A stretch of 28,987 bases of DNA, from contig VJWM01000372.1 of the NCBI GenBank assembly GCA_010909165.1, forward strand, positions 1 to 28,987, in the 5' to 3' direction. Under the pieces are notes generated by a model, which was given only the letters and a program-made list of their open reading frames with translations, had not been told where the DNA came from and did not search any database. Below are positions 1,080 through 26,208 of the stretch, piece by piece (position 1 is the stretch's first letter; every line of letters starts with the position of its first letter). The translations under genes and the position numbers were made by a program. Source of the DNA: Anthoceros angustus. Lineage: Eukaryota; Plantae; Anthocerotophyta.

Positions 1080-1126
1080 CTCAATCCTTCGCTCGGGAGC
1101 TTTCCCGTGTTGCAAATTTGGTTCGT

Positions 1127-2738: not shown

Positions 2739-2739
2739 G

Positions 2740-3645: not shown

Positions 3646-3713
3646 GTCGTAGTCCTTTGAGACGTTGATGGGATGGTGTTAGAGAGGCCGGAGGAAGATC
3701 GAAGTCGGGCGGG

Positions 3714-4773
3714 ATGACTTACCTATCCATCCAGGGATTACGCGGCGTCGCGGCCATGCTGGTCGTGATGCATCACTACAACCAGATTTTCGGGCCGCTC
3801 TCGGAACATGGCCGGGCCGAAAAGCCGTGGCTTCTTACCCTCGGCAATCTTAGCTTCTTCGGCGGATCGGCGTGTCGCTGTTCTTTGTGATCAGCGGATT
3901 TGTCATCGCCAACCAGGCTTTGAAGGAGCGGCCCGACACCTTGTCCGTTTATCTGGCGAAGCGCGTGTCGCGGGTTGTTCCATTCTATTGGCTCGTCACG
4001 CTTCTATTCGCCTGGGCGCAAGGTATGTCGTTTAACGACCAGTCTTCAGGTCCTTGCTTTTCATCGCCCATGCACCGGGCGAGGCCCTGTCATCGCACCG
4101 GGATGGACCCTCGAATATGAGATGCTGTTCTATCTGACGTTCGGCGTGTTCGTGATGTCGGGGTTCATATCGCGTGCAGCCAGGATGCTCGCGTTAGCGC
4201 GCTATTTGTGAGCATGGTTGTTGCCGGTCAGACCACCGGCAGCGCCACGTTTTCACGATTGGGGACCCGGTCCTTTGGAGTTTGTCGCCGGCGCGTCGCC
4301 ACTCTCATCAGATCGAAGAACGTCCGCCGCTTCGGCTGGCTTTATGTGATCCTTGGTTGAGCTTCGCCTTCACAACCATTGTGTACGCCGGCAGTTGGCC
4401 GTTGATCAGGACGCTATGGGGAATGGCCAGCTTCACACTCGTCCTTGGCCTCGTTTGCCTTGAGGCGCGCGGGCGAACGATCATGCGCCAACGGACATTC
4501 CAACTGATAGGCGATGCATCCTATTCCATTTACCTAGTTCATATGCCGCTCTTGCTGGTGATCCTTTCCCCACCGATTTGGCACTATGACCTCGCGGGCA
4601 TGGTAGACCCTCACATTGGCTTGGTCATTTTGATTGTGGTCGGCGCGCTCTTCGGCGTCGCCTACTATCTCCTAGAGCGGCCCGTTTGGCTTGGAAGTCG
4701 TAGGCTGCTGCTCTCTGTAATCTCTCGGCGTTCTGCCCATCGAGTGCCAGTAGTGTGGAGGCGAGATGTTTGA
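3714..4773 (+). CDS. Acyltransferase family 3 (OafA/ExoZ-like membrane O-acyltransferase); frameshifted as read
   Basis: SIQGLRGVAAMLVVMHH, GVSLFFVISGFVI, KRVSRVVPFYW, GWTLEYEMLFY and IGDASYSIYLVH are canonical Acyl_transf_3 motifs. Confidence 0.88.
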
Positions 4774-4964
4774 ACGTCTCTGCCTACGAGCCGCGCAGAG
4801 CATCGCGTCTGGCACGAGTACTCGGCCGGCGTCGTGCGATGTATCGACGGCAATATGGCGAACGGCGAGTTCGAGCCTGTGGCGGCGCTGGAATGACGGC
4901 CGCTGGGAATACCGTTGTGACGAACGGGAGAATGTCGAAGATTGGGCCGAGCGCCAATTGCTGA
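4766..4964 (+). CDS. Small Trp-rich hypothetical protein
   Basis: GGAGG RBS before the ATG at 4766, which overlaps the acyltransferase stop. Contains LWRRWNDGRWEYR...EDWAERQ. Probably frameshifted. Confidence 0.4.
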
Positions 4965-4967
4965 CAA

Positions 4968-6610
4968 CTAGAGTCCGGCCGCCGTCAGCCTGGCCTCGTG
5001 ATCCTTGATCTTGCCCCACATCACGTTGCAGACGATTGCCAGCATTTCCATCGCCAGCCATTTCCGCGAAAACTGTTCGCCTATCGACAGGTCATTGTGC
5101 ACCCAATCCACCTGAGTAGGCATGCCTGGCAGTGCCTCGTCGGCTTGCATCTTGGCGAAATACTGCTCGGGTCGCGCGGATCAAAACCGCCTTCGATCAT
5201 GGCTTTGAAGACACGGGCCGTGCGGTGCTCGCGGACGATGACAGTCTCGGGAGTGATGACCTCTTCCGTCACCGGAACGGCATCGACGCCGTTCCCTTCT
5301 TCGTCCACACCGGCTCCAGCTCGGGTAAATTCACCACCTCGATGCTTGCCTGTCTCCGCTGCACCAAAGCCCCGTCGTCGCCGCGCTCGACCGTGACGCG
5401 CTCTACCGGCATCGCTACCTCTATCGTCAGCAGAACGGTCTCGCGCTGCTCCGGCACGATCTGGTTGGGGACCAGCGCATCCCACTTGTCCAGATCGACA
5501 GTGCCGTCGTCAATGAACTCCTTCGCCATCGCCATGCAGGTCAGCAAGGTATTGTCATCATAGACCGCGCCGAAATTGATCGTGTTGTTGCCCTTGTCAC
5601 CGCCCGTCGCCGACGGATGGAACAGGCCCGCCCGATACGCAGGCGCTGGGCTGTTGCAGTGCTTCGGCTGGTCGAAAACTGAATGTAGGCATCTATGGTG
5701 CCTGACGCGATGGCGTCGGCAGCGGCTCCGAAGCTTGCGCCATTGCGCAGCACGTTCGCCGAGTCCGCGCCTTGCCACACAAAATCACCGAGAGAATCGT
5801 TGACCTGCGCGGCGGCGTTCGCTCGCGTCTTCTGAAATTAACAAAGCCCGCAGTGGCTCCGTTGTAGTCTGACCTAATCTGCATCTGCGGAAAGAATTGG
5901 GACGAGTTCTGCAGCGTGATGAATTGCCCAGAAAACGTTAGCGATTGATTGAGCATTGGAACCGTAGCGCCGCTAGTGCCGGTATCGGCCGACGCGGCGC
6001 ACCTAGAACAGCTGTGTGCTCTTTCAGCAATTTGCGTACCGTCGAACAGGGCGGGACGGTTGGCTGTCGACGAGGCCGGTCCCACTACGTCGCCAGGCCC
6101 GGTAGAACCTGTTGCGCCTACCGGTCCCGTCGGACCAACGGCGCCGCTTGGACCAGTAGCTCCAGTGGCGCCTATTCCCCTGGTCCGATCGGACCCGTAG
6201 ATCCGGTTGCGCCGGCAGCGCCTGTCACTCCTGTCGGACCCGTTGCACCGGTAGCTCCAGTCGGTCCAGTCGCCCCGAGGGGACCGGATGGCCCAGTGGT
6301 CCTCGCTCCGTTGCGCCCTCGGGTCCGGATGGACCGGTGGGGCCGGTTGCGCCTGGAGAGCCAGCGCCTCCTCCGCCGATGACTAGGCCGGGAGCAAGTG
6401 AATCCTGCGTGACGATACCGTTTTGAGCTTGCCGTCGGAACGACGAACGTCTTTGAGCGCGTCGATAGTGTCATCGGACGCGCGCTTCAGTTCGCTGAGA
6501 TCGGCCTGGAGCTGAGAGCCCGGAAACGAGTTATCTCCGAGTTCCTGCTGGAAGGAAACGTACGAATAGTCGAGTTGGGATTTTGGGGATCCGACATCGG
6601 AAGCAGCCAA
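4968..6610 (-). CDS. Phage tail fibre-like protein with collagen (Gly-X-Y) repeats; frameshifted as read
   Basis: N-terminus [25 protein letters not shown]...VRRSDGKLK, then GPTGATG repeats and the [20 protein letters not shown] motif seen in phage fibres. A beta-rich middle follows, and the C-terminus [14 protein letters not shown] resembles a fibre chaperone coil. Confidence 0.75.
6092..6365 (-). repeat. Collagen-like Gly-X-Y coding repeat (about 30 triplets)
   Basis: [38 protein letters not shown]...[27 protein letters not shown], a degenerate 9-nt period. Confidence 0.9.
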
Positions 6611-6965
6611 ACGCGCGATTGCACCTAGTCGGAGAGTTCCGACGGTTCGCGCGGCTGCTCGAGTTCCGCAGGTTTACCAGCGGAGGAACTATATAAGAAA
6701 GCGGATCGGCATGCTGGCCCGATATGAAAATATTCCTCGGGCGGGATGCTTGCCTTCCGCCTTGACCTTAGCTCCGCTCTTCCGCCCCAGGCCCATTTCT
6801 TCGCGAGTTCCACCGGGTCGCCGCGTAGTTTGGCCGCCGGCATCCTTGTCGGACTCTTCTCTGGCGCAAGCCGCCGGATCCGGCGTCGGGTGGTGCCACG
6901 CCAAAACGAAGTCGGCGTGGTCAGCGCAGGAAGCCCAGTCACGTCTCAAATGGTCGTGTAATCTT

Positions 6966-7764
6966 TCACAGCCCAGCTTCCACGTTGTAGATACCCGCCG
7001 TGCATCAGGGATTCATCTGACGCCAAAAGAGAACTAAGCGCGCGACGTGAATGGGTTGAACCGGGTCTGGAAGGCATTGGCGCTGCAAGTGGTGCTTTAG
7101 GGCGTCACCCATAGCTGCTTCTGTCGTTCTGTCGCCAGCCAGGGACGACCGTGTTTACGGATACGGTGCTTGCCCAGTTCCCGCGCGAAGGAACGTGTCA
7201 GCCCATGAACGGCAGCCTTCGCTGCAGAATACACCGCGAGCCCTCTGCCACCTTCCAGCGACGTAATGGAGCCCAGATTGATGATCGATCCTTTTCCGGC
7301 TGCAATCATTCCTGGCGCGACTGACTGGATAGCGAAGAAGAAATGGCGGAGATTGGTCGCGACACGCTCGTCAAAATAGGCCGGTGTAACTTTCGTCCAA
7401 TCGTACCTGTCGTCGTCGGCTGCGTTATTGACCAGAACGGTTACGCGCCCGAACGCTCTTGCTAGGTGGTCAGCTGAGGCCTTCAGCGCATCAATGTTCT
7501 TGAGATCGCACGAAAGGAACATTGCCGAATGCCCAAGCCCTGCAATTCATCCTGTAGCCGCGCTCCACGCTCGGTCTGGACGTCAATGAAGCCAACCGTG
7601 CGCCCTGAGCTGCAAACGATCGAACAATCTCCTCCAATCCCCGACGCGCCTCCAGTCACCAACACCACTTGGTCCGTTAAGCTTGTATAGAGCGCTGGTC
7701 TTGATTTCTGAGGTGGAACTTCCCGCGCGTTTTGAGACGAATGCTCTCGATCTTGAGCAGTCAT
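6966..7764 (-). CDS. Short-chain dehydrogenase/reductase, Caulobacter XylB (xylose dehydrogenase)-like subfamily; frameshifted as read
   Basis: YTSLTDQVVLVTGGASGIG (TGxxxGIG), LVNNAADDDR, YFDERVATNLRH, YSAAKAA (YxxxK), and a C-terminus QCLPDPVQPIHVARLVLFLASDE...YNVEAGL*. Confidence 0.85.
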
Positions 7765-7807
7765 TCCGAATGCCTTTCGCCAGGACAGACGCATCGTTCT
7801 CTTCCGT

Positions 7808-9315
7808 TCAGGATTTCGGAACCTTGCCTGATAGCGCGGCGGCCGAGCAACGTTGAAACAGGGGCGGCTTTCGGTTACTCCGAGCCAGCGGCAGACGCCT
7901 CGACCGAAGTTTTACAATACGAAACGGCACCGCACCGTAACGGTCGGTCATTTGCAGATGCATCACTGTTGAAGCTACGTGAGCGACCAGAACTGGCGGT
8001 TCCTCATCCGGCCTCAGTTGTATTGGAACCTGAAATCTCAGCATCCGTTCCCGCGGTCCCCGATTTAGAACGACGGCACGCAAACGAGCCAAGTGCCTGG
8101 CTTCCGAATTAACCTCGAAATCCACCGTCTGGACGCAGCTGGAAGCGCGACCAGCATCGTTATGTCAATTGTTCCGTTCCAAGTTTGACCCGGGCGCCGA
8201 TCTGACACGGGAAGCGATTGCTTCAACACCAAGGGTCCAGCAGAGCGCTACGCGGCCAAAAACTGGAGACGGTAAGACCGTCTTCGAACGCGAACGGGCG
8301 GCGCGGCCTCGAAGAAGCCGACTCTGTTTGGCCAATGCTCGGACGATCCAGAAAGGACCTATCCTTCTTTCTTTGGTCTCATCTCACTTAGCGAGGCGAG
8401 CAACGCAAGCGGGCGACGGGCGGTGGCTTCAGCCTTTCTAGCAGCGAAGCGGGTACCGGCCGCTGGAGCCGATCGTGAACATAGCGCAAGGCCAGGGTGG
8501 CGGGAGCTTGCAGGCGGCAGTCCTTGACAAGGGTCTCGAATAGATTCCAGTCAACACCGCTGTCTATCGCAGCGGCAATATCAGCCAGCCAGTCGCTACT
8601 CTTATGGGCGTCGAGCGCACCGTGCGCGATCGCAATGGTCACGACGTCCGTCGCCGAAGGACCCACACCGGCACATATCCGAGTTTCGATGGCGAGGCGC
8701 GGTCCAGATCGCTGTCTTGTTCGCCGTTGAAGTGTAAGGCGGCCGGAAAGGTGAGTTGTGCAGATCGAGGTTTCCAAACCGACCGCGCACAAGGTTGATG
8801 CCACCGCTTTCTCCAGAAAAGTCCGGTGATAGAGAACTGTCCCAGATCCAGCGGGCTGCCAGCCTTCCGGGTGAGCAGGTCGAAAGCACGAGTCATGTCG
8901 CCGGAACGGACAACAATGTCGACGTCGTTCAACAAGCGTCCGCGCTGCTGGGTCGCTGGAGGCGATCCGGGCGGCGCCCTTGATGAGCAGCATGTCGATG
9001 GATGCCGATGCGAGCGCTCGCATTCCTTCCGGCGGCGGCGCCGATCGTGAGCTGGCTTCGCGACCAGTTCGCCCGCTCTATTCCTGCAATGCGCCCCAGC
9101 ATTGGGCTGTCAGGCGCGAAACTCGCTACGCGCAGCCAGACCGATCAATCGCATCTCGCCTGGGGTAAGATGGTCAAAATCCGCCTCGGCCTCGAATTGC
9201 CGCCAAGCTACTGCGGCGGTTGCGATGTCCTCGAGTGTTGCGGCGCGCAAAAGTCGGTCGAGCGATTGGTTCGGCCATGCCTTGCGAAAACGAAGCTGAG
9301 AAACCTGTCGCGCAT
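7808..9315 (-). CDS. Nucleotidyltransferase family protein (NTP_transf_5-like); frameshifted as read
   Basis: LASASIDMLLIKGAA, xxDVDIVV (DxD), NLDLH, IAHG...WLADIA and VDWNLF are motifs of the uncharacterised nucleotidyltransferase family. The ATG at 9315 overlaps the GT2 stop (TGATG). 7808-8125 is taken as the C-terminal extension. Confidence 0.8.
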
Positions 9316-10013
9316 CAGGAGGACGATCCCGAACTTTGCTTAACGGCCAGAGCCTTCCTGCGCTCGATGGCTTTATGAACTGCGATCAGATATCCCCTGC
9401 TGCGTTCCGCATCGAGCCCGCTGGACAGACTGCCAGCACGAATCCTCCGCATCGCCAGGATCTCCTCAACCATGCCATGTCGATGGCCGAGATCGAGGCT
9501 TCGCGCGAGCCAGTCGACCAACTCCCCGAGATAGCCGGGCAGGTCAACCATATCGCCGACCTCGCGAGCCGCATCGGTCCGAAAGACCAGGGTAGAGCGG
9601 GTCCACAGACGGCGAACCGCGCCTTGGCCCTCCGGGTCCGGCATCTCGCCATTCCGAAACAGTCTGGCCAATGTGAAAACTCCAGCCAAACCTGGATCAT
9701 CGTCTAGGGCGCGGAGCTGCCGTGCGATCTTGGTGGGAGCCAAAGATCGTCTGCATCGAGCGTGGCCACCAACGGTGTAGAGACGCTGTTGAAGCCTACC
9801 GTTGTGGCAGTGCCTGGACCTTGGTTTTTGGCTGATGACCGTAATCGGACCTGCGATCTCGGCGACGACTGACAATGTGGCGTCGGTAGAGCCGTCATCA
9901 ACGATGATGACCTCCTTCGCGCGGACCGTTTGGGCTAGGACAGACGCAACGGTGTCTTTGATCGTCAGCGCAGCATTGTACGCTGGGATAACCACTGAAT
10001 AAGCGCTGGTCAC
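9315..10013 (-). CDS. Glycosyltransferase family 2
   Basis: YSVVIPAYNAA, VIIVDDGSTD, NQGPG and ATLDADDLWLP. The GTG start at 10013 appears to overlap the previous gene's TGA. Confidence 0.88.
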   Translation of the reverse strand: MTSAYSVVIPAYNAALTIKDTVASVLAQTVRAKEVIIVDDGSTDATLSVVAEIAGPITVISQKPRSRHCHNGRLQQRLYTVGGHARCRRSLAPTKIARQLRALDDDPGLAGVFTLARLFRNGEMPDPEGQGAVRRLWTRSTLVFRTDAAREVGDMVDLPGYLGELVDWLARSLDLGHRHGMVEEILAMRRIRAGSLSSGLDAERSRGYLIAVHKAIERRKALAVKQSSGSSS

Positions 10014-10759
10014 CGCCCTTGGCCTTTTCGATTTCGTCTCGTCGCAGGAAAGGTCAGCGAACACGGAGGGAGCGCCGGCTTTCCGCTCATTCGGTTTCGG
10101 ACTGCCCATTTGAGACTGGCGAGCATGAACTCGCGTTGCATCTCCGGTACATTCAGCGTGACGTTCGATCGTGCCGGCGATAGTAAGCTGCCAAGCCATC
10201 GTCCAGCACAAGTTTGAATTCCTTTTCGACGACGCGAAGCACGAAATCTGTGTCACATCCTTGGCGAAAACTCTCGTCGAACGGGCTGACGCGTCTCACC
10301 ACTTCCGGTCGGTACATCGCCGATTGAAGATAAGGCCCACGAATTATTTTGGTCTCGCTCCCGACCTCAGGCGCGTCGCCCGACTTGTTGGCAATCGTGA
10401 ACAGCTCCATCAGACCGTATAGTGCATCGATAGTGGGATCGCTGAGGAGAAGGGATCGCTGACGCTCAATCCGCCCGGGATACGAAAGGTCATCTGCATC
10501 AAGAAAGGCGATGAACCGGCAGTCGGTTCGGACATTATCGATACCGGTGTTGCGTGCCGCAGCGATGCCCTTACGGGGTTCCGAAGTAGCCGGACCTCGT
10601 GAAAGTCCTGGGCCAGCATATTCACAATATCTCTCGTCTCATCAGTCGAGCCGTCATCGACCACAACGATGTCCAGGTTGACTGCTGCGCGCTCAGCGGG
10701 AGTGCGGCCTCGATAAAGCGGGCCGCATTGAAAGCCGGCATGATGACACTAACCGGCAT
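10010..10759 (-). CDS. Glycosyltransferase family 2; frameshifted as read
   Basis: VSVIMPAFNAARFI, VVDDGSTDET, AARNTG, FLDADD, FDESFRQGCDTDFVLR and YYRRH. Confidence 0.88.
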
Positions 10760-11831
10760 GGCCCGCTCCCGTGCAAGAAACGATCCTATCGCATCTGCGA
10801 TCTCGGCCGGGTCCTCCGACAGGATTACGCTGAAGGCTGGTAAGCGCTTTACCAAGGATGCAAAGAACCGAAAACCTTCAGACGCATCGCCCGAGCTGGA
10901 GGACCGCTGAAGGGTGCAAGCGCTAGAGCCGCGGTATGGCTAGCCACGGGCTCTATACTGGTGCGCTTTGCCCGAGCGATCCGTGGGATCAAAATTGCGC
11001 GGATTTCCATCCTGTCCTTGAAGGCATGTGGGCATCAGACTTGCGGCGTCAAACTCGACCTTGCCGTGCAAGTTCCGTTTCGCGCCGATCAAGTCTGTTG
11101 CTTGAATTCCTGCCCGACGAAGTCCGTCCTCATCTTGCTTAAAGGTCTTGAAGGCCGAATAGGCTGCCACCGCCGCACCTTGTTCGACGAGGACATAGTC
11201 GTCGCCGACGCTGTCAAGCCATTCATGAAGCCCGCTAGCGTAGTGCCAGATTTTCCCGACCCGCTCGGGCCGACGATCAGGCTCCGTTGATCCCAAGCGT
11301 AGCAGCGTGCGTTAGGCGCTTGCCAATCCTCGCCTGAGCCCAATGCACGAAGAGGCGCAGCGGCGATCCAAGCTCCCAGGGGAATGTCCAACGGTCCGGG
11401 CAATGTATGAACACCAACGGCGGCGCCACTATCGTAGAATTGCCAAGACGGAGCGTCGTGATGATAAAAGCCGCGCCTATCGCCGGCAGCCAGGATACGT
11501 TCGAATTCGCGACGAGAAACCCGATTCTTCGTCCCATATCGCTGGCGGGTCCCACTCTTCTGCTTCCGCATCCAGCGCGAAAATTTCTGCTGCTTGCTGG
11601 AAAGGCGCCTCACTGTGATGCTGGACAAGCATCGACTCACAAACCTCCGCAAGCCCCTTACTTGTAGAACCAAACCGTCATGTCGAGCCGCGCCAAGCTC
11701 AAGTCGCGCCGAATCAAGCGCTCTCTGGGAAGCGCTCGGCAGCCCTTAGTCGGTCGTTAGCGTAGGCAAGGAGATTGGCCGAGGATACCTTGAACGGGAC
11801 ATTCACTTGGTCGGTCCGTTGCCGCTGTCAT
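10749..11831 (-). CDS. HPr kinase-related serine kinase; frameshifted as read
   Basis: LTHAATLGING..LIVGPSGSGKSGTTL (conserved His plus Walker A) followed by VGDDYVLV (the DD motif of the HprK family). Confidence 0.82.
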
Positions 11832-12255
11832 ATGACTGAGGCCTCGGTGCAGGCCATCCAGCTTGCTCATCGACGTCATGAATGGGGTCGGCAAAGATAA
11901 GCTCCGCCAAATCATCGAAAATCTCGATCTTTGAGGTTCTCCGGTCCAACTCTCGCTCAAAGCGGCTGAGAGATTGGGTTCGCTACCTTCTTGCGGACGA
12001 ATTAGCTTCAGTTCAAGTAGCTTATCGATGAAACGGTTGGCCTCGTCACCCAACTCTGGCCGGTGTTGCCCGTCCTATCAAAGATGGCCTGCGGCGTTTG
12101 ACCTGCAAGCAGATTGTTCCAACGGTCGATGCGATACCACCGAGACTGAAATAACGACCATCCGACAAGTTCAATATGACAATCTGCCCGCCGAAATCTT
12201 CGGAAACGACGTCAGGCGCGCTAATCGCATATATTCTATCGGGCAGAACTGGCAT
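11803..12255 (-). CDS. PqqD-family / RiPP recognition element (RRE) protein with a C-terminal DPIHDVDxxxGWP tail; frameshifted as read
   Basis: PDVVSEDFGGQIVILNLSDGRYFSLGGIAS (RRE three-stranded sheet), ANRFIDKLLELKLI (last helix), then KIEIFDDLAELIFADPIHDVDEQAGWP. Confidence 0.82.
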
Positions 12256-13051
12256 CCCTGCCCTCTGAACCCAAGCCGAAACTCCGCAACCCGGGTATAC
12301 GACAGTTGTCGTTGCGGCAACAAGACGTGAAGCCGTTCGAAGGCAGCAGGCCAGTTAAGCGACCACCGAGGTGTTTGCCGTTACACGGTGGGAATTCAGG
12401 TGGTCTTCACTGCCGGCCAATCATAGGGGTTAAGGCGCGATGGTTTCAGATTGATATCGCATTCCGAGCGCCGCAGACGAACGGCACACGCAGCGGCGTC
12501 GAACTTCGATCGTTATGGAACGGCAAGGCAGACGCTCATCCCTGCAGTCTGTTCCTGTTCGGGAATCGTTTCACAGGGTTCCATTGGGCTTCGCTAGCCT
12601 TTGCGGCTCCTCTTTACAACGCATCACGCTTGTTCCTTGTCTCGCATACGTGGTCGATAGAACACATCAGGCGGCAAAGAAGCTGCGTGAACAAGCGGCA
12701 CCATCGATTCGTTAATAGGCACCATCGGATCGTGATCATGCGCAGTACGGCAAAGGAGGTTGCGACTCGTGCACGGGAAGCGGCTGCCTATGCACTACGT
12801 CCACGTTAACAGCCCGACCGAGTGGCACAGATGTCGTGGTCGCAGGCGATGCGAGTTGTGGAGATTTGGGCGAAAGTTCCGCTCGCGCAGGTTCTTCTCG
12901 AGTCATGGAACGAATGGAGACATGATCGGTAATACGTTGTTGTCGCAGGGCGCGTCGAGCACCGCCGATCAGCATTGCATTGCACGAGCCGTTGGCTAAT
13001 TTGCTCCTTGGGACCGGCGGGATGGCAGCTTCCGCGGTTCAAGGAGCGTCC

Positions 13052-14044
13052 ATGAATCCGCGGCATCCCGCGCAGTCGTAGTCGTGGCGAATGATGCGTT
13101 CATCGACTATTTCATCCCTTTCCTTGAAAGCTTCCGCGAACACCCGATCCTCAGGCTAATCGTCGTCCCTTTCGACGACGACACCAAGCTCGTTCGGCTT
13201 CTGGCGCCTGTCTACAATTTCGAGATGTATGATGGGCCCGTCGAGAAGATCGACCAACTTGCGGACATGATCTTCGGCGACGACGCACTCCGGCGGCGCA
13301 AAGCTGATCGCTTTGACCTGGATCTTAACGAGTTCCTCTACATCGACACGGATATTCTGGTCGGAATGGACCTCAGCGTGTTCTTCGGACACACGGTCAA
13401 TGGAGAGGCTGATCTGGTCTTCGTCACCAATGGCGGCGATTGGGTCTACAAAGCTGATACGGCGCAGCTGCTCGATTTCGATTACTCGACCCGTTTCGGC
13501 ACGGCGATGTTTGTCTCCAGCCACCGGAGAATGACGGTGGAAGACATTGCAGCAGTGATGTGCTCGCATAGGGACTTGTTCCTCGAAGTGAAGGTCGACA
13601 ATCTCTTCGATCAGCCGTTGCTCAACTTCTTTGTTCACGCGACAAAAGGACGGCGCGATCAGGGCGGGACCTCGGCGTGAACTTCGTATTTGGTGATCCC
13701 CTGTTCAACGACGCTGTCATAGTGCGCAATGGAAGCCTATGATCGGGGCAAGACAAGTCACGCTGACCCATTGGTCCGGGCCGCGGAAGTTCGCCCGCAA
13801 GGTGAGGTTTGCAAGCCTTCTGAGACCCTATGTCCGACGGGCACAGGGACGCCTGCAACACCTCCCCGAATTTAAGAGGTGGTCTCCCTTCGCCAGAAAG
13901 GGAATAGCAGCAAGACTTGCCCAGAAGGCATCGAAACTCGTGCATCGATCGCGGCTAGGCCTCGCTCAATTCAAAGCGGCTTTATCGCTCGGCGTCAGAA
14001 GGCCACGACTTACTGGAAAGGGCACTGCAGGCGTGGTCTCCACA
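13052..14044 (+). CDS. GT-A fold glycosyltransferase, GT8-like; possibly the N-terminal part of a fusion with the next domain
   Basis: AAGGAG RBS before the ATG at 13052. VVVANDAFIDYF, FLYIDTDILV (DxD), FDQPLLNF and LTHWSG match GT8-type motifs. Confidence 0.72.
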
Positions 14045-14045
14045 G

Positions 14046-14591
14046 GCGCAACTCACTCCCATGCAGGCCGAGATCATCGGCTCGCTTCTGACTTACCGCA
14101 ACTTTCGCGCCAATCTGCTCATATTCGGCGCGGGACATGACACGCCATACTGGACTGCACTGAACGCCCACGGACATACGCTGATTGTCGAGGAAGATGC
14201 CGACTGGGCCGGCAAGGTAGAGCGCAGGCTGAATTCCGGTTCACTTGTCCGTTATGTCTACCGACCACGGTCGCGGATACTGTAAAGCCAGATCCGGCAA
14301 AGCTCGACACCCTTCTGGAACCGCCGGGACTGCGCGACGCGGGTGGGACGTAATACTGATTGATGGTCCCACAGGCTACGCGGACGGCAAACCCGGGCGC
14401 GCGCTTGATCTACTGGGCATCCAAGTACGCTAATCCAACAACACATGTCTTCGTGGATGATTTTGAACGACCACTGGAGAAGACCTATTGCGAGTTCTTC
14501 TTCGGCGGCGATCCGCGTGGTTACTCTGCCCTCACATAGCGGCGCTCAGATGTTCTGGCGGGTCGGCGAGGGGCTCCTAGGCAAGGCGTGA
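14046..14591 (+). CDS. DUF579 / Polysacc_synt_4 domain (plant GXM glucuronoxylan methyltransferase-like); frameshifted as read
   Basis: NLLIFGAGHDTPYWTALNAHGHTLIVEEDADW, WDVILIDGPTGYADGKPGR and HVFVDDFERPLE closely parallel the plant GXM/IRX15 motifs as I recall them (NFLVFGLGHDS..W..LN.GG.T.FLEED..W; WD.IMVDAPTGY....PGR; VFVHD..R..E). Confidence 0.75.
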
Positions 14592-14604
14592 GCCCCGGCG
14601 TCGA

Positions 14605-14885
14605 ATGCTTGCACAGCCATTCTTGAAGCCAGTCCACGTATGGGGCGGACTTGGCTTTCCCAGGCGACTGAACACGGTTGCCGACGCCTGCCAGTTCGCG
14701 TCGGAGTGGGGCGGCAACAGTCCTGAGCAGCAGGCAGTCCGCGCCTGTAAGGCCGCACTCGCTGGCGAGATCGACACAGAAACCGCACGGGCGTGTTCAC
14801 CGCCTTCGCGAGGAGGAAAGACATTCTGGTCGAAGACGAGACGATCCCGTTCGTGGCGAAGAATTCGCGGGCACGTCACGTGTAA
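14605..14885 (+). CDS. DUF982 family protein, copy 1
   Basis: MLAQPFLKPVHVW..LGFPRRLNTVADA.QF..EW...AVRACKAALAGEIDTETAR..FTAFARRKDILVED is a typical rhizobial DUF982 pattern. Confidence 0.8.
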
Positions 14886-15320
14886 TAAAAGGGGCGTCAG
14901 CCCAATGGATGCCGCCCTTCGTTTTCTGGTCCAATGGATGGCTTCAGGAATCTTCATCATCACGCTGGCGGCCAGCCTGGCGTTGGCTGGCTACCTGCTC
15001 GCCGGGTGTTCGGCCTCATTCCATAGGCCTCAGCCCGGCCACCTTCTCACGTCTGATCGTATCTCGCCGCCGCTTGGCTCTCGAGATGATGCCGACAGCC
15101 AAGTGAGCCCACATCGCCAGCACGAGCACAACTCCACCGATCAGAATTGGGCGAATGACCTGCCATGGACATAGTGGTGAACCAGCGCTACTCGATCCAC
15201 GCTGCGGCAAGTAGCGCTGCAGCGGCTGTAAAATCCTCGATGCCCTAATTCATGCTGATCGCCCTGGTTCGATCTGGTTATTGTGCCGCAGTACGATCCA
15301 GCGCGCCAACCGAGAATCGC

Positions 15321-15485
15321 ATGAGACCGATCACGACCAATGTAGGCAAGATGCGTGAGCTTCTATCGGACGTTACGTCAGAGATGCATCCCGGCGACTA
15401 CACAGACACTCTAGTGAATTTGGTCTACTACGCGCTCGCCGAGGCAGAGCGAATTGCCAGCTGCTCAACGACAACACAGCGCTGA
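15321..15485 (+). CDS. Small hypothetical protein (MRPITTNVGKMRELLSDV...)
   Basis: Helical, protein-like 54-aa ORF with a GAGAA purine run upstream. Confidence 0.35.
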   Translation: MRPITTNVGKMRELLSDVTSEMHPGDYTDTLVNLVYYALAEAERIASCSTTTQR

Positions 15486-15901
15486 TTCATATGGTCCGAG
15501 AGATCAGAATCCGTGGCGTCAACGCACGTGCCGCCAGGTAAGCGGATCAACTGATCAGGCTGGCTTCATCATCGGCGCCGCAGGCGAGGCCCAACCTGCG
15601 ACCGGCCCTCTTCCTGCGAACGATTGCTTCGACTGCGCGGCGTCCATACCGCGCTACCCTGAATACGCCTGTTCCGACACACTTAGCTGCCACTACCGAT
15701 CTCGACTATGCGGCCGAACACGTGTGCCGTGCCGACAATGCTTTGGGCACCTACGAACCGGCTGAAGAGCGCTAAGCGGAGCGGCGACTGAACTCGAACG
15801 GCGCGCCGCTTTGCGCGCAACGCGAGCTTGCAACCACACTAGCAATGGTGAGGACATCGTTCTCTGCTTTAGCTGCTGTGTTAATTTGGAGGACTATCTT
15901 G

Positions 15902-16212
15902 GTGAGAAATCTATCGATCATGGCGATCGCTGCGTTGATGGTTGCAAGCTTCGAGCATTCTGCGTCTGGCGCGTCGATCGGTGCGGGCAATCCCTATCCC
16001 GTCAGTACACGTGCGAGGACGGCACGCGTCTGGCAGTGCGTCTTTTCGATGATCGCGCTTCGGTATCCGTCAACGACGCAGTCGCAGTCGATCTGCCCTC
16101 CATGGGGCCGGAGGGACGACCTATTCGAAGGCCAGCAGACGCTGACCATCGTACAGGGGCGCCTATCGTGGGGCGTTGGCGGAGCCGTGCCGTCCGCATG
16201 CATCGGGGTTGA
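15902..16212 (+). CDS. Exported protein, MliC/PliC (lysozyme inhibitor)-like; frameshifted as read
   Basis: GGAGGA RBS and a signal-like N-terminus (RNLSIMAIAALMVAS). YTCEDGTRLAVRLFDDRASV...VDLPSMG...QTLTIVQG...SAC has the two-Cys MliC-like layout. Confidence 0.5.
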
Positions 16213-16530
16213 GCGTCTCATTTCGCTGCAAGATATTGATATCCAGAACATCTGTTCGGCCGCGGTCTGTGTCGACTTGGAAGGTACACCCGAAAGTCGC
16301 GTCAGCCTGGCGCATCGGTCCGGTAAGTTCGGTAGTGCCTCCACCATTTTTGAGCGCGACGCGAAGCGATGATTTGAAGCCGAACATCGCGCCGCATGGG
16401 CATGCCGCGTCACAACGCGACGGAACTCATGATGCCCACTGCGGCGCTCGTAGGTTCCATGCGGGCGCCTCAGCCCGCGGAATGAAATCGCTCGGCTGCA
16501 CGAGTAACCGATCACAGTCAGTCTCGACAT
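16163..16530 (-). CDS. Hypothetical protein; frameshifted as read
   Basis: Protein-like C-terminal segment FKSSLRVALKNGGGTTELTGPMRQADATFGCTFQVDTDRGRTDVLDINIL. No family recognised. Confidence 0.3.
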
Positions 16531-16581
16531 GCTGCCGATACACCAAAAATCTAACTCTTCTGCCCGTGTTGGAACAGGGAG

Positions 16582-17041
16582 ATGCTTGATGAATCATCGC
16601 GAAATTGCGTCCTCGTTGAACGGACGCGTGTGGACATTGATCGAGAAATCAACCGGACTGCTGACGAAACCGATGAGATGATTCAAGCGGCACGCCAGCC
16701 TATGGCATTGGTTGCAGGTGGTGGCCTGGTTGAACGCCAGCGTGGCGAATGGCTGGTCGGCCGGGCCTATCTGATGGCTGGTGACGCGGTGACAGCGCAG
16801 CGTTACGCGCAGAGCGCCTGCTGGCGGCTCACACCCCATACTTTCGAAGATTTCGACCACGCGTATGCGCACGAGTTGCGCGCGTTTTTGCGATGAGCGG
16901 AAACGCCGAACTCGCTATGTCACATCACGCCCAGGCGATGCGTCTTGGGCAGGCGATCGTTGATCATGCCGATCGCAATCTTTTCTTCAAGACATCGCAC
17001 ACGGTCCGTGGTTTGGGATGACCATGCAAGCGCATGTCTGA
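16582..17041 (+). CDS. Conserved hypothetical helical protein; frameshifted as read
   Basis: RTADETDEMIQAA.ASLWHW..VGG...QRGEWLVGRAY...DFDHAYAHE...AIVDHADRNLFF.DI..GPWFG. AGGGAG RBS. Confidence 0.6.
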
Positions 17042-17246
17042 CGGGAGCGCACCTAGTCCGAGCAACGAGCCATGACGGCTTCCCACCAGCCGGACTCGGC
17101 CGATGCTGTGCTGCTTCCTCCTTCACGTCGGGATAGCCACCCCTTGAAACGGCGGAAACGTGTCACAAATTTTTCTACGGCCATGTCCTGCAAAGGCTGC
17201 CATCAAACCAGCGCCGGATCGCCGGCCAAGAGCCAAGGAGGTATCT

Positions 17247-17526
17247 ATGCTTGCACAGCCATTCTTGAAGCCAGTCCACGTATGGGTCGGACTTGGCTTT
17301 CCCAGGCGACTGAACACGGTTGCCGACGCCTACCAGTTCGCGTCAGGTGGGGCGGCAACAGTCCTGAGCAGCGGGCAGCAGTCCGCGCCTGTAAGGCCAC
17401 ACTCGCTGGCGAGATCGACACAGAAACCGCACGGGGCGTGTTCACCGCCTTCGCGAGGAAAGACATTCTGGTCGAAGACGAGACGATCCGTTCGTGGCGA
17501 AGAATTCGCGGGCACGTCACGTCTGA
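17247..17526 (+). CDS. DUF982 family protein, copy 2
   Basis: AAGGAGG RBS. Near-identical in nucleotide sequence to 14605-14885. Confidence 0.82.
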
Positions 17527-17533
17527 GTTACCT

Positions 17534-17560
17534 AAGGCGCCGGACGCTGCGGCGCCCTTC
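17534..17560. terminator. GC-rich hairpin between convergent genes, possible terminator
   Basis: GGCGCCG (17536-17542) and CGGCGCC (17550-17556) form an inverted repeat just after the DUF982 stop. Confidence 0.45.
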
Positions 17561-17654
17561 AATTTGAGTTGAACCGAGACGTATGGGCACATCCGGGCGC
17601 TTCAGCTGCGGGCGCAGTGTAGTGATCAGTGCCACCACCTGCTTTCCGAATTTG

Positions 17655-18540
17655 CTATGGCGGCGGCATGATACGCGTCCGTCGGCCAAATCGAATGCGA
17701 TGCTCCACAACCCGGCCGTGGGGCGCTGACCCGTCGCTGGTCCAAGACTCGCATTGGTGCTGCAGCCTTATGAGGCTACCCGCAACGTCTAGCCGAACGC
17801 CAGGCCGCTTGCCGAAAACCCTGAGCACCATTGCAAGCTGATGCCTTGTCCAAGTCACTTGGACTATGGGTTGAGGCACGGCTCGGGCGGCGTACCGATA
17901 TGTACCTTCCGGTTGCGCGATGGCAACGAGATCACCGGTACAGTATCTGGGCACCGCACGCCGCAACATTGTGGCGATCGCATCTTCCATAAACGTGCGC
18001 ACGTCGCTCGCATTGCTGGCATCCGACATCGCCGCCTGAGCGATAATAGGGCCTGTGTCGAATTGATCGGTCATCTCGTGCAGCGTCATGCCGCCGTATT
18101 GTTCCCACGCATTGTCCAGCGCAATCCAATGTAAAGGTTTAGGGCCGTGGTAGTGCGGAAGCAGAGCAGGATGGAAATTCAGCAGCCCATGGGGAAATAC
18201 GGAACGTATGTGAGCAGGAATGAGGCGCGGAAACCCGAAGCAGATCCCGATATCCGGCCTGTCACGTTGAAGTTGCTCGCGAAGTTGTTCCCAATCTGGC
18301 GAGGACATGTTGATGAGACGGATATGGTTGCGGCGTAGCAACTTCAGAAGCGACCATCGAATTCTTAGCCAACGGAAGGGATGCCTTAGCGCCGTGGGCC
18401 AGCGCTGCCGATAAAACACGACGGCGGCCAAGTGATGTCCTTCTTCCAGCCATGCTTTGATTATCACCGACGCGGGGAAGATAACTCAAGAAACAGGATT
18501 GCCGACAATTTCCGGCTGGGCAACGTCGACTTTGCTCCAT
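17655..18540 (-). CDS. Formyltransferase (Fmt/ArnA N-terminal-like, N10-formyl-THF dependent)
   Basis: PDIGICFGFPRLIP, LLNFHPALLPHYHGPKPLHW and GMTLHEMTDQFDTGPIIAQ are Formyl_trans_N motifs. The start is placed at the ATG at 18540 across a frameshift. Confidence 0.85.
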
Positions 18541-18584
18541 TGAGTTCAGCTCCGTGCACCGATTTTTACTCGCTTTTTGTCGAG

Positions 18585-18615
18585 GTTGACCGCGATAAGG
18601 CGGCCACATTATAGG
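18585..18615 (+). promoter_or_regulatory. Possible sigma70-type promoter upstream of the peptide gene
   Basis: TTGACC (18586-18591), then 17 nt, then TTATAG (18609-18614). Confidence 0.3.
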
Positions 18616-18699
18616 ATCTCGTTGACGAAGCTTATGACCGGTGTCCCGGACTGAGCTGTGATGTATACATAACGCTCACTGCACATATCGAGGATGCGA

Positions 18700-18831
18700 A
18701 TGAAAAGAAGCTACGAAAAGCCCGTGTTTGTTCGTCGCCAGAAACTAAGCTGTATCACGGCTTTGAGCGAGGGCTCGTTAGAGCCAAAGGTTCCGACGAA
18801 GTTTGAGCTTTCCCAGCGGCTGCGTCGCTGA
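18700..18831 (+). CDS. Putative RiPP precursor with a lasso-type leader (MKRSYEKPVFVRRQKLSCITA-LSEGSLEPKVP...)
   Basis: GAGGA RBS 5 nt before the ATG. YxxPxF RRE-binding motif and an LSxITA leader end. Below the ORF-track length cutoff. One missing base would give ...KVPDEV* ending near 18806. Confidence 0.72.
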   Translation: MKRSYEKPVFVRRQKLSCITALSEGSLEPKVPTKFELSQRLRR

Positions 18832-19358: not shown

Positions 19359-19717
19359 TCAGCCCAACGTAAACGGTCGCAAGTGATTTAGTCCACTCAT
19401 TCGCATATGGCCGAGACGCTTCTCACCCGAATAGATTTCCGACAACGGGAACATGCGCAACCGGCCGAACTGCTGCCCGGGCCTGCGATGCCGCTCGCAT
19501 CGTCTGTTAGGCTCGAAGCGCTTTATCGACTTCGGTGTCTTGAACACGAAAAGTGCCTGGCACTGCGCGCAACTCGATCGCCATAAGGCCAATTTGCTCA
19601 TGGCGCCGTCCTTCGGCGCTCATAGCGCTCGAAGCCGATGCATTCATAACGCTGGCCGTCGTACTCGCGGACCTTTCGACCTTTGCCTCGATCATCGACC
19701 CGCTCGATCACCTTCAT
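19359..19717 (-). CDS. Phage hypothetical protein with CxxC; frameshifted as read
   Basis: ATGA overlap with the upstream gene. Contains YDGQRYECIGFERYERR..GAMSKLALWRSSCAQCQALFVFKTP...PNRRCERHR. Confidence 0.5.
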
Positions 19718-23945: not shown

Positions 23946-23955
23946 GGCGACCTCG

Positions 23956-25089: not shown

Positions 25090-25120
25090 AAAGAAAAGGC
25101 GCGCTTAGAAAGCGCGCCTT
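25090..25120 (-). terminator. Rho-independent terminator
   Basis: Perfect 11-bp stem AAGGCGCGCTT (25096-25106) / AAGCGCGCCTT (25110-25120), with a T-rich tail on the minus strand, 11 nt after the stop at 25132. Confidence 0.8.
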
Positions 25121-25131
25121 GCCGCCGTCCG

Positions 25132-26169: not shown

Positions 26170-26208
26170 AAACAAAATGATTAGGGCCGCGGCCTACGTT
26201 GCGTCGCG

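What the first reader, a model, noticed from the sequence alone, without database searches (positions are those of the whole stretch)
6966..18831. Candidate new RiPP-like system: RRE, HPr-type kinase, two GT2s, nucleotidyltransferase and a lasso-type precursor, but no lasso cyclase or protease
Seen: a mostly overlapping minus-strand operon PqqD/RRE -> HprK-like kinase -> GT2 -> GT2 -> nucleotidyltransferase -> SDR. The same cargo block has a divergent GT8-like/DUF579 gene, a formyltransferase and a short peptide gene with a YxxPx(L/F) leader. Established: RRE plus HprK-like kinase, sometimes with a nucleotidyltransferase, act as tailoring enzymes in Firmicute lasso peptide clusters (paeninodin, pseudomycoidin), which also need an asparagine-synthetase-like cyclase and a transglutaminase-like B2 protease. 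Neither is recognisable here. Inference: the RRE delivers a peptide whose Ser/Thr is phosphorylated, then nucleotidylated and/or glycosylated, and the sugars are further oxidised, methylated or formylated. The product would be a linear phospho-glycopeptide or a peptide-primed glycan rather than a lasso peptide.
Basis: partly seen in the sequence, partly recalled or inferred. Interest (0 to 1): 0.9.

Follow-up and report, generated by a model that had tools for sequence, protein, structure and literature searches.

The report
Cyclase-less peptide phospho-glycosylation gene cluster
A soil or plant bacterium's contig carries a conserved five-gene operon (peptide-binding adaptor, serine-type kinase, two sugar transferases, nucleotidyltransferase) beside a small lasso-style precursor gene, which probably makes a linear sugar-phosphate-decorated peptide; a similar kind was described in 2026, but only in Bacillota.

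Summary
Observation: confirmed. The minus strand of 7097-12273 holds PqqD/RRE, HprK-like kinase, GT2, GT2, NTP_transf_5 and SDR. Beside it lie a GT8-like/DUF579 gene, a formyltransferase-like gene and a precursor peptide gene (18700-18831). The reading frames are broken by assembly indels, not by decay. The window has no lasso cyclase and no B2 protease.

Comparative evidence:
- The five-gene core ("module A") is a self-contained operon in 65 species genomes, mostly Mesorhizobium and other Hyphomicrobiales.
- The peptide belongs to a large family of about 30-residue peptides (598 clusters). They share a lasso-type leader, Thr at -2, a 5-22 residue core and a Ser near core position 5. They are too short for a lasso.
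- In relatives this peptide family and the formyltransferase go with a second module ("module B": RRE, B2 protease, HprK-like kinase, NTase). Module B has no cyclase and is absent from this window.
- Modules A and B lie side by side in only two loci.

Interpretation: partly supported. A cyclase-less, linear phospho-(glyco)peptide pathway is likely. Whether module A acts on this peptide is not shown.

Novelty: a new alphaproteobacterial variant of a known kind. Linear polyphosphorylated peptides were reported in Bacillota in 2026 (PMC13381572). The scan's index holds only first-reader notes on this same window and no earlier finding of this on other DNA.

The parts
11839..12273 (-). PqqD-family RRE (about 143 aa). 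It has a lasso-B1-like domain, a variable linker and a conserved C-terminal tail (leader-like strand, helix, DPIH-D/E-V..GWP motif). In the window it is split into two ORFs (12046-12255 and 11757-12053).
   Evidence: tblastn with L005 PqqD1, 44% identity. The L005 orthologue scores 29.6 bits for PF05402, above the 23.4 cut-off. AF2 model and Foldseek give TbiB1/FusB1 as best matches. Tail conservation is seen in 34-36 sequences.
10766..11857 (-). HprK-like P-loop kinase (about 320 aa), frameshifted in the window.
   Evidence: The Walker A motif GPSGSGKS and the GDDYV motif are conserved. Scores are below the cut-offs of TIGR04352, TIGR04355, TIGR04249 and TIGR00679.
10012..10750 (-). First family-2 glycosyltransferase (GT-A, about 250 aa, soluble).
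   Evidence: tblastn 60% to L005 GT2a. Pfam Glycos_transf_2 on the fragment and on the L005 orthologue.
9321..10013 (-). Second family-2 glycosyltransferase (about 235 aa).
   Evidence: tblastn 59% to L005 GT2b. Pfam 5e-16. A DADD motif is present in ORF 9704-9901.
7892..9307 (-). NTP_transf_5 nucleotidyltransferase (about 490 aa): NTase core, helical domain and C-terminal beta-sandwich.
   Evidence: tblastn to L005 NT5a. PF14907 scores 88 bits on the orthologue. The D-x-D motif is invariant and is seen as DVD in window ORF 8639-8935. AF2 pLDDT is 86; Foldseek matches ANT(2'')-Ia, MenT, LnuA and FKRP.
7097..7794 (-). Short-chain dehydrogenase/reductase, the last gene of the operon in this lineage.
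   Evidence: Pfam adh_short 1.5e-27. Also adjacent in the roughly 95% identical plant-metagenome contig. Not part of the core in other genera.
13084..14539 (+). Divergent sugar-modifying gene or genes: a GT8-like nucleotide-sugar transferase part (13084-13680) and an IRX15/GXM (DUF579) methyltransferase part (14061-14539).
   Evidence: Pfam PF21729 8e-11. Atlas embedding hits to GT8/Nucleotid_trans clusters, 0.95-0.96. A DUF579 gene is also next to the module in L002. Fused or adjacent: undecidable because of the frameshifts.
17573..18473 (-). Formyltransferase-like enzyme (ArnA/Fmt-type, about 335 aa).
   Evidence: Pfam 1.4e-18. 47% identical to L005 Fmt and 33-34% to the Fmt genes beside the peptide (L083) and inside module B (L084). 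Nearest solved structures are the ArnA formyltransferase domain and Met-tRNA formyltransferase.
18700..18831 (+). Precursor peptide gene. It has a lasso-type leader (YEKPVF, Thr at -2, ITA junction) and a core beginning LSEGS with Ser at position 5. A GAGGA ribosome-binding site lies 5 nt upstream. The C-terminal end is uncertain because of possible indel errors.
   Evidence: 49 bits against the family HMM. The family has 598 representative clusters. NCBI names members 'putative RiPP precursor'.
14605..17540 (+). Two 98% identical DUF982 gene copies (14605- and 17247-) that bracket 2.6 kb between the sugar genes and the formyltransferase. Probably not part of the system.

Best explanation
The window carries parts of a cyclase-less pathway, derived from lasso machinery, for making short linear modified peptides.

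The two modules:
- Module A (7892-12273, plus an SDR) is a self-contained, translationally coupled operon. It encodes a lasso-B1-type RRE, an HprK-like serine kinase, two soluble GT2 glycosyltransferases and an NTP_transf_5 enzyme.
- The neighbouring peptide gene and formyltransferase belong to a sister module B. In relatives module B adds its own RRE, a B2 leader protease, a kinase and an NTase.

Proposed mechanism. Only the gene content, folds and motifs are shown; every step below is inferred.
1. An RRE binds the YxxPx(L/F) leader.
2. An HprK-like kinase phosphorylates, possibly more than once, the conserved Ser at about core position 5.
3. The NTP_transf_5 enzyme couples a first sugar or sugar-phosphate to that phosphate. 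This is by analogy with PsmN of pseudomycoidin.
4. The GT2s, and here the GT8-like enzyme, extend the glycan.
5. The DUF579 methyltransferase and the SDR tailor the sugars.
6. A B2 protease encoded elsewhere removes the leader after Thr-Ala.
7. The formyltransferase caps the new N-terminus or an amino sugar.

The product would be a linear peptide of about 7-15 residues carrying a phosphoglycan.

My estimates: about 0.7 that module A is an RRE-guided phospho-glycosylation system acting on a peptide or protein, and about 0.35-0.4 that its substrate is this particular peptide family.
For: - Gene order and identity.
- The core is conserved in 65 loci with unrelated flanks.
- Overlapping stop/start junctions in the L005 operon.
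- The RRE fold and sequence are closest to lasso B1 proteins solved with leader peptides (5v1v, 5v1u, 6jx3).
- Catalytic motifs are kept in the kinase and the NTase.
- NTase fold as in ANT(2'')-Ia and FKRP.
- A GT4-NTP_transf_5 fusion occurs in L006, within a GT-rich cluster.
- Peptide family, among 145 representatives: Ser at core positions 4-6 in 131, Thr at -2 in 127, acidic residue at 7-9 in only 21, modal core length 9-10.
- Module B loci lack Asn_synthase.
- Module A, peptide and module B are contiguous in L005 and L085, although the two module A copies are only 35-59% identical.
- The peptide-formyltransferase pair recurs in the window, L005 and L083, and the formyltransferase sits inside module B in L084.
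- M. loti DSM 2626 has the peptide and module A (L040). Mesorhizobium sp. SARCC-RB16n has the peptide and module A (L044).
- Published precedent: LppK polyphosphorylates Ser3 of a linear core (PMC13381572). PsmK and PsmN give phospho- then hexosyl-Ser (PMC6993621).
Against: - Only 1 of 65 module A loci has a family peptide within 10 kb, and no conserved small ORF lies upstream of the RRE.
- Module B already has its own RRE, kinase and NTase, so module A could serve another substrate. A comparable case is the co-localised but separate LPP and paeninodin systems of Bacillota.
- The module A RRE carries a conserved, leader-like tail that the AF2 model packs onto the domain. This tail might occupy the leader groove.
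- The window lacks any protease or exporter.
- NTase is replaced by an FkbM methyltransferase in some variants.
- The complex prediction of RRE with peptide gave no verdict.
- No chemistry has been measured for any member.
Confidence: 0.45

Rival explanations
1. RRE-precursor fusion, or self-priming. The substrate of module A is the conserved C-terminal tail of its own PqqD-like protein. The tail has a leader-like strand with a P-x-(L/I/V) motif, a helix, and the invariant DPIH-(D/E)-V..GWP 'core'. The operon would then need no separate precursor gene.
For: - Module A is self-contained and has no precursor nearby in 64 of 65 loci.
- The tail is the most conserved part of the protein across Alphaproteobacteria and a cyanobacterium. 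In Crinalium it reads FEKPML before the DPIHEVD..GWP motif, close to the free peptides' YEKPTL.
- AF2 places a confident strand (111-115) and helix (118-124) on the RRE and leaves the last ~18 residues flexible.
- The Crinalium cluster has no visible YxxP precursor.
Against: - The tail has no invariant Ser, Thr or Tyr, whereas characterised HprK-like RiPP kinases are strictly Ser-specific (PMC13381572).
- The YxxP aromatic residue is not kept in most alphaproteobacterial tails.
- Such strong conservation fits a docking or autoinhibitory element as well as a core.
Confidence: 0.2
2. Module A serves a different peptide or protein substrate, not yet identified and encoded elsewhere. Its closeness to the YxxP/Ser5 peptide in this window is coincidental, within a mobile, phage-flanked cargo region. 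The peptide and formyltransferase would be a stranded piece of module B.
For: - Flanks are phage-like: muramidase, injection-protein-like, AAA_25.
- All four module B enzymes are absent.
- 5 kb with duplicated DUF982 genes separates the operon from the peptide.
- In Bacillota, two RRE/kinase/NTase systems co-localise yet keep separate precursors.
- KIN1 and KIN2 resemble each other only around the P-loop.
Against: - The same neighbourhood (module A, formyltransferase and/or peptide, module B) recurs in L005 and L085 with diverged module A copies.
- No other leader-bearing small ORF was found in any module A locus.
Confidence: 0.2
3. Non-peptide glycan pathway. The operon builds or caps a soluble or lipid-linked oligosaccharide. 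The kinase phosphorylates a sugar, as in WbdD-type chain terminators, and the PqqD-like protein acts only as a scaffold.
For: - The locus is rich in sugar enzymes: GT2 twice, GT8-like, DUF579, SDR. Relatives add GT4, GT10, GT11/GT61, UDP-sugar dehydrogenase, epimerase and FkbM.
- Variants pair kinase, GT2s and an FkbM methyltransferase without an NTase.
- An Acyl_transf_3 gene lies in the window.
Against: - No initiating phosphoglycosyltransferase, flippase, polymerase or ABC exporter is conserved with the module.
- All five proteins appear soluble.
- The RRE fold closest to lasso B1 proteins has, to my knowledge, no reported role outside peptide recognition.
Confidence: 0.12
4. Ordinary lasso peptide. 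A cyclase and a B2 protease elsewhere in the genome turn this precursor into a threaded lasso, which the operon then tailors as in paeninodin or pseudomycoidin.
For: The leader has the lasso YxxPxL motif and Thr at -2. The window's core happens to have Glu at position 7.
Against: - Family cores are mostly 7-13 residues. Only 21 of 145 have Asp/Glu at 7-9 and 19 of 145 reach 14 residues.
- None of five module B loci (L005, L069, L079, L084, L085) shows an Asn_synthase gene within about 10 kb.
- The first core residue here is Leu.
Confidence: 0.03

Closest known systems
Linear polyphosphorylated peptides (LPP) of Bacillota (Popov et al., Nat Commun 2026, PMC13381572)
   Same: Discrete lasso-type RRE, HprK-like kinase and uncharacterised NTP transferase, with no macrolactam cyclase. 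The precursor has a YxxPx(V/L) leader and a Ser early in the core (Ser3 there, about Ser5 here). The clusters are embedded among glycosyltransferase genes, and a linear product is expected.
   Different: - LPP uses a SipW-like signal peptidase (LppS) and an MsbA-like exporter; neither is present here. The alphaproteobacterial peptides go with a lasso-type B2 protease instead.
- Cores here are 5-22 residues, against 45 and more in LPP.
- Module A has two dedicated GT2s in the operon and an RRE with a conserved tail.
- The paper states that LPPs are restricted to Bacillota.
Paeninodin / pseudomycoidin tailoring enzymes (PadeK/PsmK kinase, PsmN nucleotidyltransferase; PMC6993621)
   Same: HprK-like kinase plus NTP_transf_5-type enzyme acting with a lasso B1 RRE. 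PsmN is required for adding hexose(s) to the phospho-Ser. PsmN also modelled on ANT(2'') and used a D-x-D pair.
   Different: - Those act on true lasso peptides made by an Asn-synthetase-like cyclase, and on the C-terminal Ser.
- Here there is no cyclase, the Ser is internal, dedicated GT2s are present, and sequence similarity is only distant (all HprK subfamily models score below their cut-offs).
Canonical lasso peptide clusters (A, B1, B2, C)
   Same: Leader motif, Thr at -2, B1-type RRE (31-34% identical to TbiB1), and in relatives a B2 transglutaminase-like protease (NF033537 above its cut-off).
   Different: No cyclase in any locus examined. Cores are too short and mostly lack the Asp/Glu acceptor.
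Mycofactocin glycosylation (MftB RRE, MftF GT2)
   Same: A PqqD-type RRE pathway in which a family-2 glycosyltransferase decorates a ribosomal-peptide-derived product. The GT2s here give weak hits to the MftF model.
   Different: No radical-SAM enzyme is present. Scores are far below the MftF cut-off (57 against 280 bits). Kinase and NTase are absent from mycofactocin clusters.
Haft's HPr-rel-A system, HprK_rel_B and the SynChlorMet ScmC cassettes (NCBIfam TIGR04352, TIGR04355, TIGR04249)
   Same: Uncharacterised cassettes that pair an HprK-like P-loop protein with a PqqD-family protein.
   Different: The kinases here score 16-34 bits against cut-offs of 125-200. They form a separate subfamily with a different gene set.

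Membership tests
Lasso peptide biosynthetic cluster | Asn-synthetase-like macrolactam cyclase (C protein) | tested here: not met
   No Asn_synthase among Pfam hits of the 150 longest six-frame ORFs. None in the gene lists of L084 and L085 or L005.
Lasso peptide biosynthetic cluster | B2 transglutaminase-like leader protease | tested here: not met
   Absent from the window by Pfam, tblastn and a B2 HMM. Present in relatives next to the same peptide family: NF033537 scores 58.7 and 49.7 bits against a cut-off of 33.
Lasso peptide biosynthetic cluster | Discrete B1 RRE of PqqD fold | tested here: met
   The AF2 model of the orthologue matches TbiB1 (5v1v, TM 0.79, 31% identity) and FusB1 (6jx3). 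PF05402 is above its cut-off.
Lasso peptide biosynthetic cluster | Precursor with YxxPxL leader, Thr at -2, and a core of about 14 or more residues with Asp/Glu at 7-9 | tested here: inconclusive
   The leader features are met. The core features fail for the family: 21 of 145 have Asp/Glu at 7-9 and 19 of 145 have at least 14 residues. The window's own core end is unreliable.
Linear polyphosphorylated peptides (LPP, PMC13381572) | Core set of RRE + HprK-like kinase + NTP transferase without a cyclase | tested here: met
Linear polyphosphorylated peptides (LPP, PMC13381572) | SipW-like signal peptidase LppS and MsbA-like exporter LppD | tested here: not met
   No signal-peptidase or ABC-transporter family among the window's Pfam hits, and none in the gene lists of module A or module B loci. 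A Crinalium relative does have an ABC transporter.
Linear polyphosphorylated peptides (LPP, PMC13381572) | Leader consensus YxxPxVLxHQxIxFETxxS | tested here: not met
   Only the YxxPx(L/F) part is shared. The rest of the leader follows a different consensus ending LSAVTA.
Linear polyphosphorylated peptides (LPP, PMC13381572) | Polyphosphorylation of a core Ser by the kinase | not testable with these tools
   Needs mass spectrometry. A Ser is conserved at core positions 4-6 in 131 of 145 family members.
HprK_rel_A / HprK_rel_B / ScmC / HPr(Ser) kinase (NCBIfam) | Score at or above the curated cut-off | tested here: not met
   Best scores are 33.9, 30.1, 16.5 and 28.1 bits, against cut-offs of 200, 200, 125 and 240.
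HprK-like P-loop kinase superfamily | Walker A G-x-S-G-x-G-K-S/T followed by the catalytic Asp-Asp segment | tested here: met
   GPSGSGKS and GDDYV are nearly invariant in alignment A1 and visible in the window fragments. Weak Hpr_kinase_C hits cover exactly this region.
NTP_transf_5 (PF14907) | Pfam score above the gathering threshold, and an NTase fold with a D-x-D metal site | tested here: met
   88.1 bits against 31.2 for the orthologue. D133 and D135 are invariant. Fold matches ANT(2'')-Ia, MenT and FKRP. The window fragment alone scores 25 bits because of the frameshifts.

The most novel reading that the evidence does not exclude
Hyphomicrobiales, and some cyanobacteria and other soil phyla, possess a two-module pathway without a cyclase, descended from lasso machinery.
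- Arrays of roughly 30-residue precursors, often encoded far from the enzymes, are cut by a B2 protease.
- The precursors are phosphorylated on Ser5.
- They are then used by the five-gene module A as a primer on which an NTase and dedicated glycosyltransferases build a phosphodiester-linked oligosaccharide.
The product would be a ribosomal peptide-primed phosphoglycan, a natural-product type not yet described. It may be relevant to the surface or signalling biology of plant-associated rhizobia.
Probability: 0.3. Interest if true: 0.8.

Novelty: new variant of a known kind. Interest (0 to 1): 0.62.

Why it matters
If the reading holds, phospho-peptide chemistry without a cyclase would extend beyond Bacillota. 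It was described only in 2026 and was said to be confined to that phylum. Here it would appear in plant-associated Alphaproteobacteria with a different leader protease (B2) and with built-in glycosyltransferases.

That could finally show what the enigmatic NTP_transf_5 enzymes do. LppN was silent in the published system, possibly for lack of such partner enzymes.

It would also give a function to about 600 clusters of tiny genes annotated only as 'putative RiPP precursor', and to an operon present in many Mesorhizobium symbionts.

The work offers a concrete experiment: five or ten genes plus a 30-residue peptide.

Tried and rejected
- **Plasmid DNA searches.** A near-identity search found nothing. 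A distant search hit only SDR and DUF982 pieces.
- **Rfam and tRNA.** Rfam gave no RNA family and no tRNA was found.
- **NCBIfam on window fragments.** Uninformative because of the frameshifts.
- **Complex prediction.** The module A RRE (L005, residues 1-100) with the L005 peptide scored 0.01, "no verdict". This is neither support nor evidence against binding.
- **Peptide search with the search for homologous proteins.** Replaced by the exhaustive profile search.
- **Regex searches for YxxP small ORFs in module A loci.** These found only L005. The more sensitive HMM agreed.
- **Mesorhizobium tandem small ORF clusters C1/C4 as precursors.** Rejected. C4 are small secreted proteins with a signal peptide, and C1 is their antisense frame.
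- **Crinalium 137-aa hypothetical as a precursor.** Rejected for lack of a leader motif.
- **Mapping published leader-contact residues onto the module A RRE.** Inconclusive. The acidic residue four positions before the conserved Phe is not kept in all members.
- **First core-statistics script.** It used a wrong spacing and was redone.

Full report
**What the window is.** The 28,987-base window is bacterial DNA of Hyphomicrobiales type.
- DUF982 pieces match Mesorhizobium plasmids and the SDR matches Phyllobacterium and Aureimonas.
- According to the scan's own index, the contig sits in an assembly of a plant, probably a hornwort.
- Reading frames are broken everywhere. The longest ORF is 320 aa and runs of five or more identical bases are rare.
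- Short-read contigs from the same sample lie on 7000-12400 with almost no substitutions but with 7-11 gaps per 0.5-1.2 kb. Three indels are shared by all four runs laid.
- The frameshifts are therefore assembly errors, not pseudogenes.
- A plant-metagenome run holds the whole operon at about 95% identity.

**Check of the observation.** I used the intact operon of Mesorhizobium sp. KR9-304 (L005) as a ruler. The minus strand then reads as follows:

| Gene | Coordinates |
|---|---|
| PqqD/RRE | 12273-11839 |
| kinase | about 11857-10766 |
| GT2 | 10750-10012 |
| GT2 | 10013-9321 |
| NTP_transf_5 | 9307-7892 |
| SDR | 7794-7097 |

- Pfam hits on the fragments agree. The intact orthologues pass the Pfam cut-offs for PqqD, Glycos_transf_2 (twice), NTP_transf_5 and Formyl_trans_N.
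- The kinase keeps the HprK Walker A and Asp-Asp motifs. It scores far below the cut-offs of HPr kinase, HprK_rel_A, HprK_rel_B and ScmC, so it is a separate subfamily.
- On the plus strand, 14061-14282 is an IRX15/GXM (DUF579) domain. 13084-13677 is GT8-like only by an embedding search.
- 17573-18473 (minus strand) is an ArnA/Fmt-type formyltransferase.
- 18700-18831 encodes the peptide and has a GAGGA ribosome-binding site.
- No cyclase or B2 protease is present. Pfam over the 150 longest six-frame ORFs gives 18 families and neither of these. tblastn and HMMs of B2 and of the other module B proteins find nothing.

**The operon is a conserved, self-contained unit (module A).**
- A scan of one genome per species found 65 loci. 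About 45 are Mesorhizobium species. The rest are other Hyphomicrobiales, Dongiaceae, and MAGs labelled Rokubacteria and Blastocatellia.
- The order RRE-kinase-GT2-GT2(-GT2)-NTase is kept, while the flanks are unrelated between genera. In Mesorhizobium they are housekeeping genes.
- In L005 the genes overlap or abut.
- All five products are soluble-sized. No flippase, polymerase, initiating transferase or exporter travels with them.
- Variants are informative:
  - A divergent GT4 gene accompanies the closer relatives. In L006 it is fused to a second NTP_transf_5 domain, inside a cluster with GT10, a GT11/GT4/GT61 giant and a further HprK-like gene.
  - In L001 and L088 an FkbM methyltransferase replaces the NTase.
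  - A Crinalium plasmid has PqqD-NTase-HPr kinase-FkbM-GT-A, and on the opposite strand SDR, GT-A, an NTase and an ABC transporter.

**The RRE.**
- The module A PqqD protein is about 143 aa: an RRE domain, a variable linker and a very conserved tail.
- The AF2 model has pLDDT 75. Its RRE domain matches the lasso B1 proteins TbiB1 and FusB1, which were solved with leader peptides, at 31-34% identity.
- The first half of the tail is modelled confidently as a strand plus a helix on the domain. The last ~18 residues, holding the invariant DPIH..V.E..GWP, are flexible.
- In Crinalium the tail reads FEKPML just before that motif. This is close to the YEKPTL of the free peptides.
- I could not inspect coordinates. 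That the tail occupies the leader groove is therefore an inference.

**The peptide.**
- The window's peptide aligns with a 30-residue ORF in L005.
- A metagenome scan and an exhaustive profile search show a large family: 598 representative clusters at E of 0.001 or better.
- NCBI names some members 'putative RiPP precursor' in Mesorhizobium. No NCBIfam model reaches its cut-off.
- Among 145 representatives:

| Feature | Count or value |
|---|---|
| Thr at leader position -2 | 127 |
| Core length | 5-22 residues, mode 9-10 |
| Ser at core position 5 | 102 |
| Ser at core positions 4-6 | 131 |
| Asp/Glu at core positions 7-9 | 21 |

- These peptides cannot in general be lasso peptides. The conserved Ser is the obvious kinase target.
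- Genes of the family often stand in tandem arrays of three or four, and often far from any enzyme gene. An example is M. loti DSM 2626.

**The peptide's own machinery (module B).**
- Where enzymes are adjacent, they are a 92-118 aa RRE, a B2 protease (above the NF033537 cut-off), a second HprK-like kinase and a shorter NTP_transf_5 (L005, L069, L079, L084, L085).
- With these come either the formyltransferase (L084; also L083, where it directly follows the peptide) or an ACP, an acyl-AMP ligase and a GNAT (L005, L079, L085).
- None of these loci shows an Asn_synthase gene.
- Module B kinases are common in Mesorhizobium. They are only distantly related to module A kinases.
- The window therefore holds module A plus two stray parts of module B: the peptide and the formyltransferase.

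**How strong is the link between module A and the peptide?**

For the link:
- The RRE type fits such a leader.
- Modules A and B are contiguous in L005 and L085, although the two module A copies share only 35-59% identity while the module B copies share 76-87%.
- The window repeats the neighbourhood.
- At least M. loti DSM 2626 and strain SARCC-RB16n carry both the peptide and module A.

Against the link:
- A family HMM finds the peptide within 10 kb of module A in only 1 of 65 loci.
- The gaps upstream of the RRE hold no conserved small ORF.
- Module B is already complete in itself.
- The complex prediction gave no verdict.

**Comparison with the literature.**
- Popov et al. 2026 (PMC13381572) defined linear polyphosphorylated peptides in Bacillota. 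The system has a YxxPxVL leader, a discrete RRE, the HprK-like kinase LppK that polyphosphorylates Ser3, an NTP transferase with no detected activity, a SipW-like peptidase and an exporter. It has no cyclase, sits within GT-rich capsule loci, and is stated to be restricted to Bacillota.
- Zyubko et al. 2019 (PMC6993621) showed that PsmN, of the same NTase family, is needed to add one or two hexoses to the phospho-Ser of pseudomycoidin.
- My NTase model matches ANT(2'')-Ia, as PsmN did, and also FKRP, a phosphodiester-forming transferase. Either nucleotidylyl transfer or sugar-phosphate transfer therefore remains possible.
- I found no paper on the alphaproteobacterial modules or on the peptide family.

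**Verdict.**
- Three corrections apply. A B2 protease belongs to the pathway in relatives. The peptide's cognate module is a different one. The concept has a 2026 precedent.
- The system is best classed as a new variant of a known kind. Its open question, what module A modifies, can be tested directly.

Noticed in passing
window 1-28987: The contig is bacterial (Hyphomicrobiales-like) but is filed in a plant (hornwort-like) genome assembly. It carries dense indel errors. Same-sample short-read contigs differ from it almost only by gaps.
   Followed up: partly
window 2883-4120 and 19700-28100: The flanks look like a prophage or mobile element. They hold an N-acetylmuramidase (2883-3645, minus strand), an Acyl_transf_3 fragment (3714-4120), a 320-aa ORF similar to a Rhizobium phage 'injection protein' (23154-24116), an AAA_25 ATPase (27570-28088) and a 68% GC block at 20-24 kb. 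The RiPP-like genes may be cargo.
   Followed up: partly
window 14605-14791 and 17247-17435: Two 98% identical direct copies of a DUF982 gene lie 2.64 kb apart. This is either a recent duplication or an assembly artefact. DUF982 also lies near the peptide-formyltransferase pair in L083.
   Followed up: no
L071-L077, L079, L080 (metagenome and Mesorhizobium loci): Precursor genes of the family occur in tandem arrays of 2-4 paralogues with different cores. There are two leader subtypes, ending in VTA or VVA. Many arrays are far from any maturation gene.
   Followed up: partly
L006:6814-9189 and L006:13879-18264: A 792-aa GT4-NTP_transf_5 fusion and a 1462-aa protein with GT11-like, GT4 and GT61 domains flank module A in an alphaproteobacterial MAG. 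A GT10 fucosyltransferase and an extra HprK-like gene are also present.
   Followed up: partly
L088:2874-3710 and L001:7862-10102: These are module A variants in which an FkbM/RfbT-type methyltransferase takes the place of the nucleotidyltransferase. In L001 it is fused to a GT2.
   Followed up: no
L002 (ENA metagenome contig), 918-7793 and 10541-13832: Two inverted copies of DUF579-PqqD-kinase-GT2-GT2 lie on one 15.9-kb contig, plus an NTP_transf_5 gene. The DUF579 association seen in the window recurs here.
   Followed up: no
Mesorhizobium loci, e.g. L023:4972-5804, L038:4995-6205: Tandem genes for roughly 78-aa secreted proteins (signal peptide, C-terminal GSDRNLFG motif, possibly DUF680) sit a few kb upstream of module A in many Mesorhizobium species. 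No link to the module has been shown.
   Followed up: no
L068 (Crinalium epipsammum plasmid NC_019735.1) 5896-17248: A cyanobacterial plasmid cluster holds a tailed PqqD protein, two NTP_transf_5-type genes, an HPr-kinase-like gene, FkbM, two GT-A genes, an SDR, SMP-30, a TPR protein and an ABC transporter. No obvious separate precursor is present.
   Followed up: partly
L005, L079, L085 (module B): An ACP, an acyl-AMP ligase and, in L085, a GNAT accompany module B where the formyltransferase is absent or additional. This suggests alternative N-acyl or N-formyl capping of the cleaved peptide.
   Followed up: no
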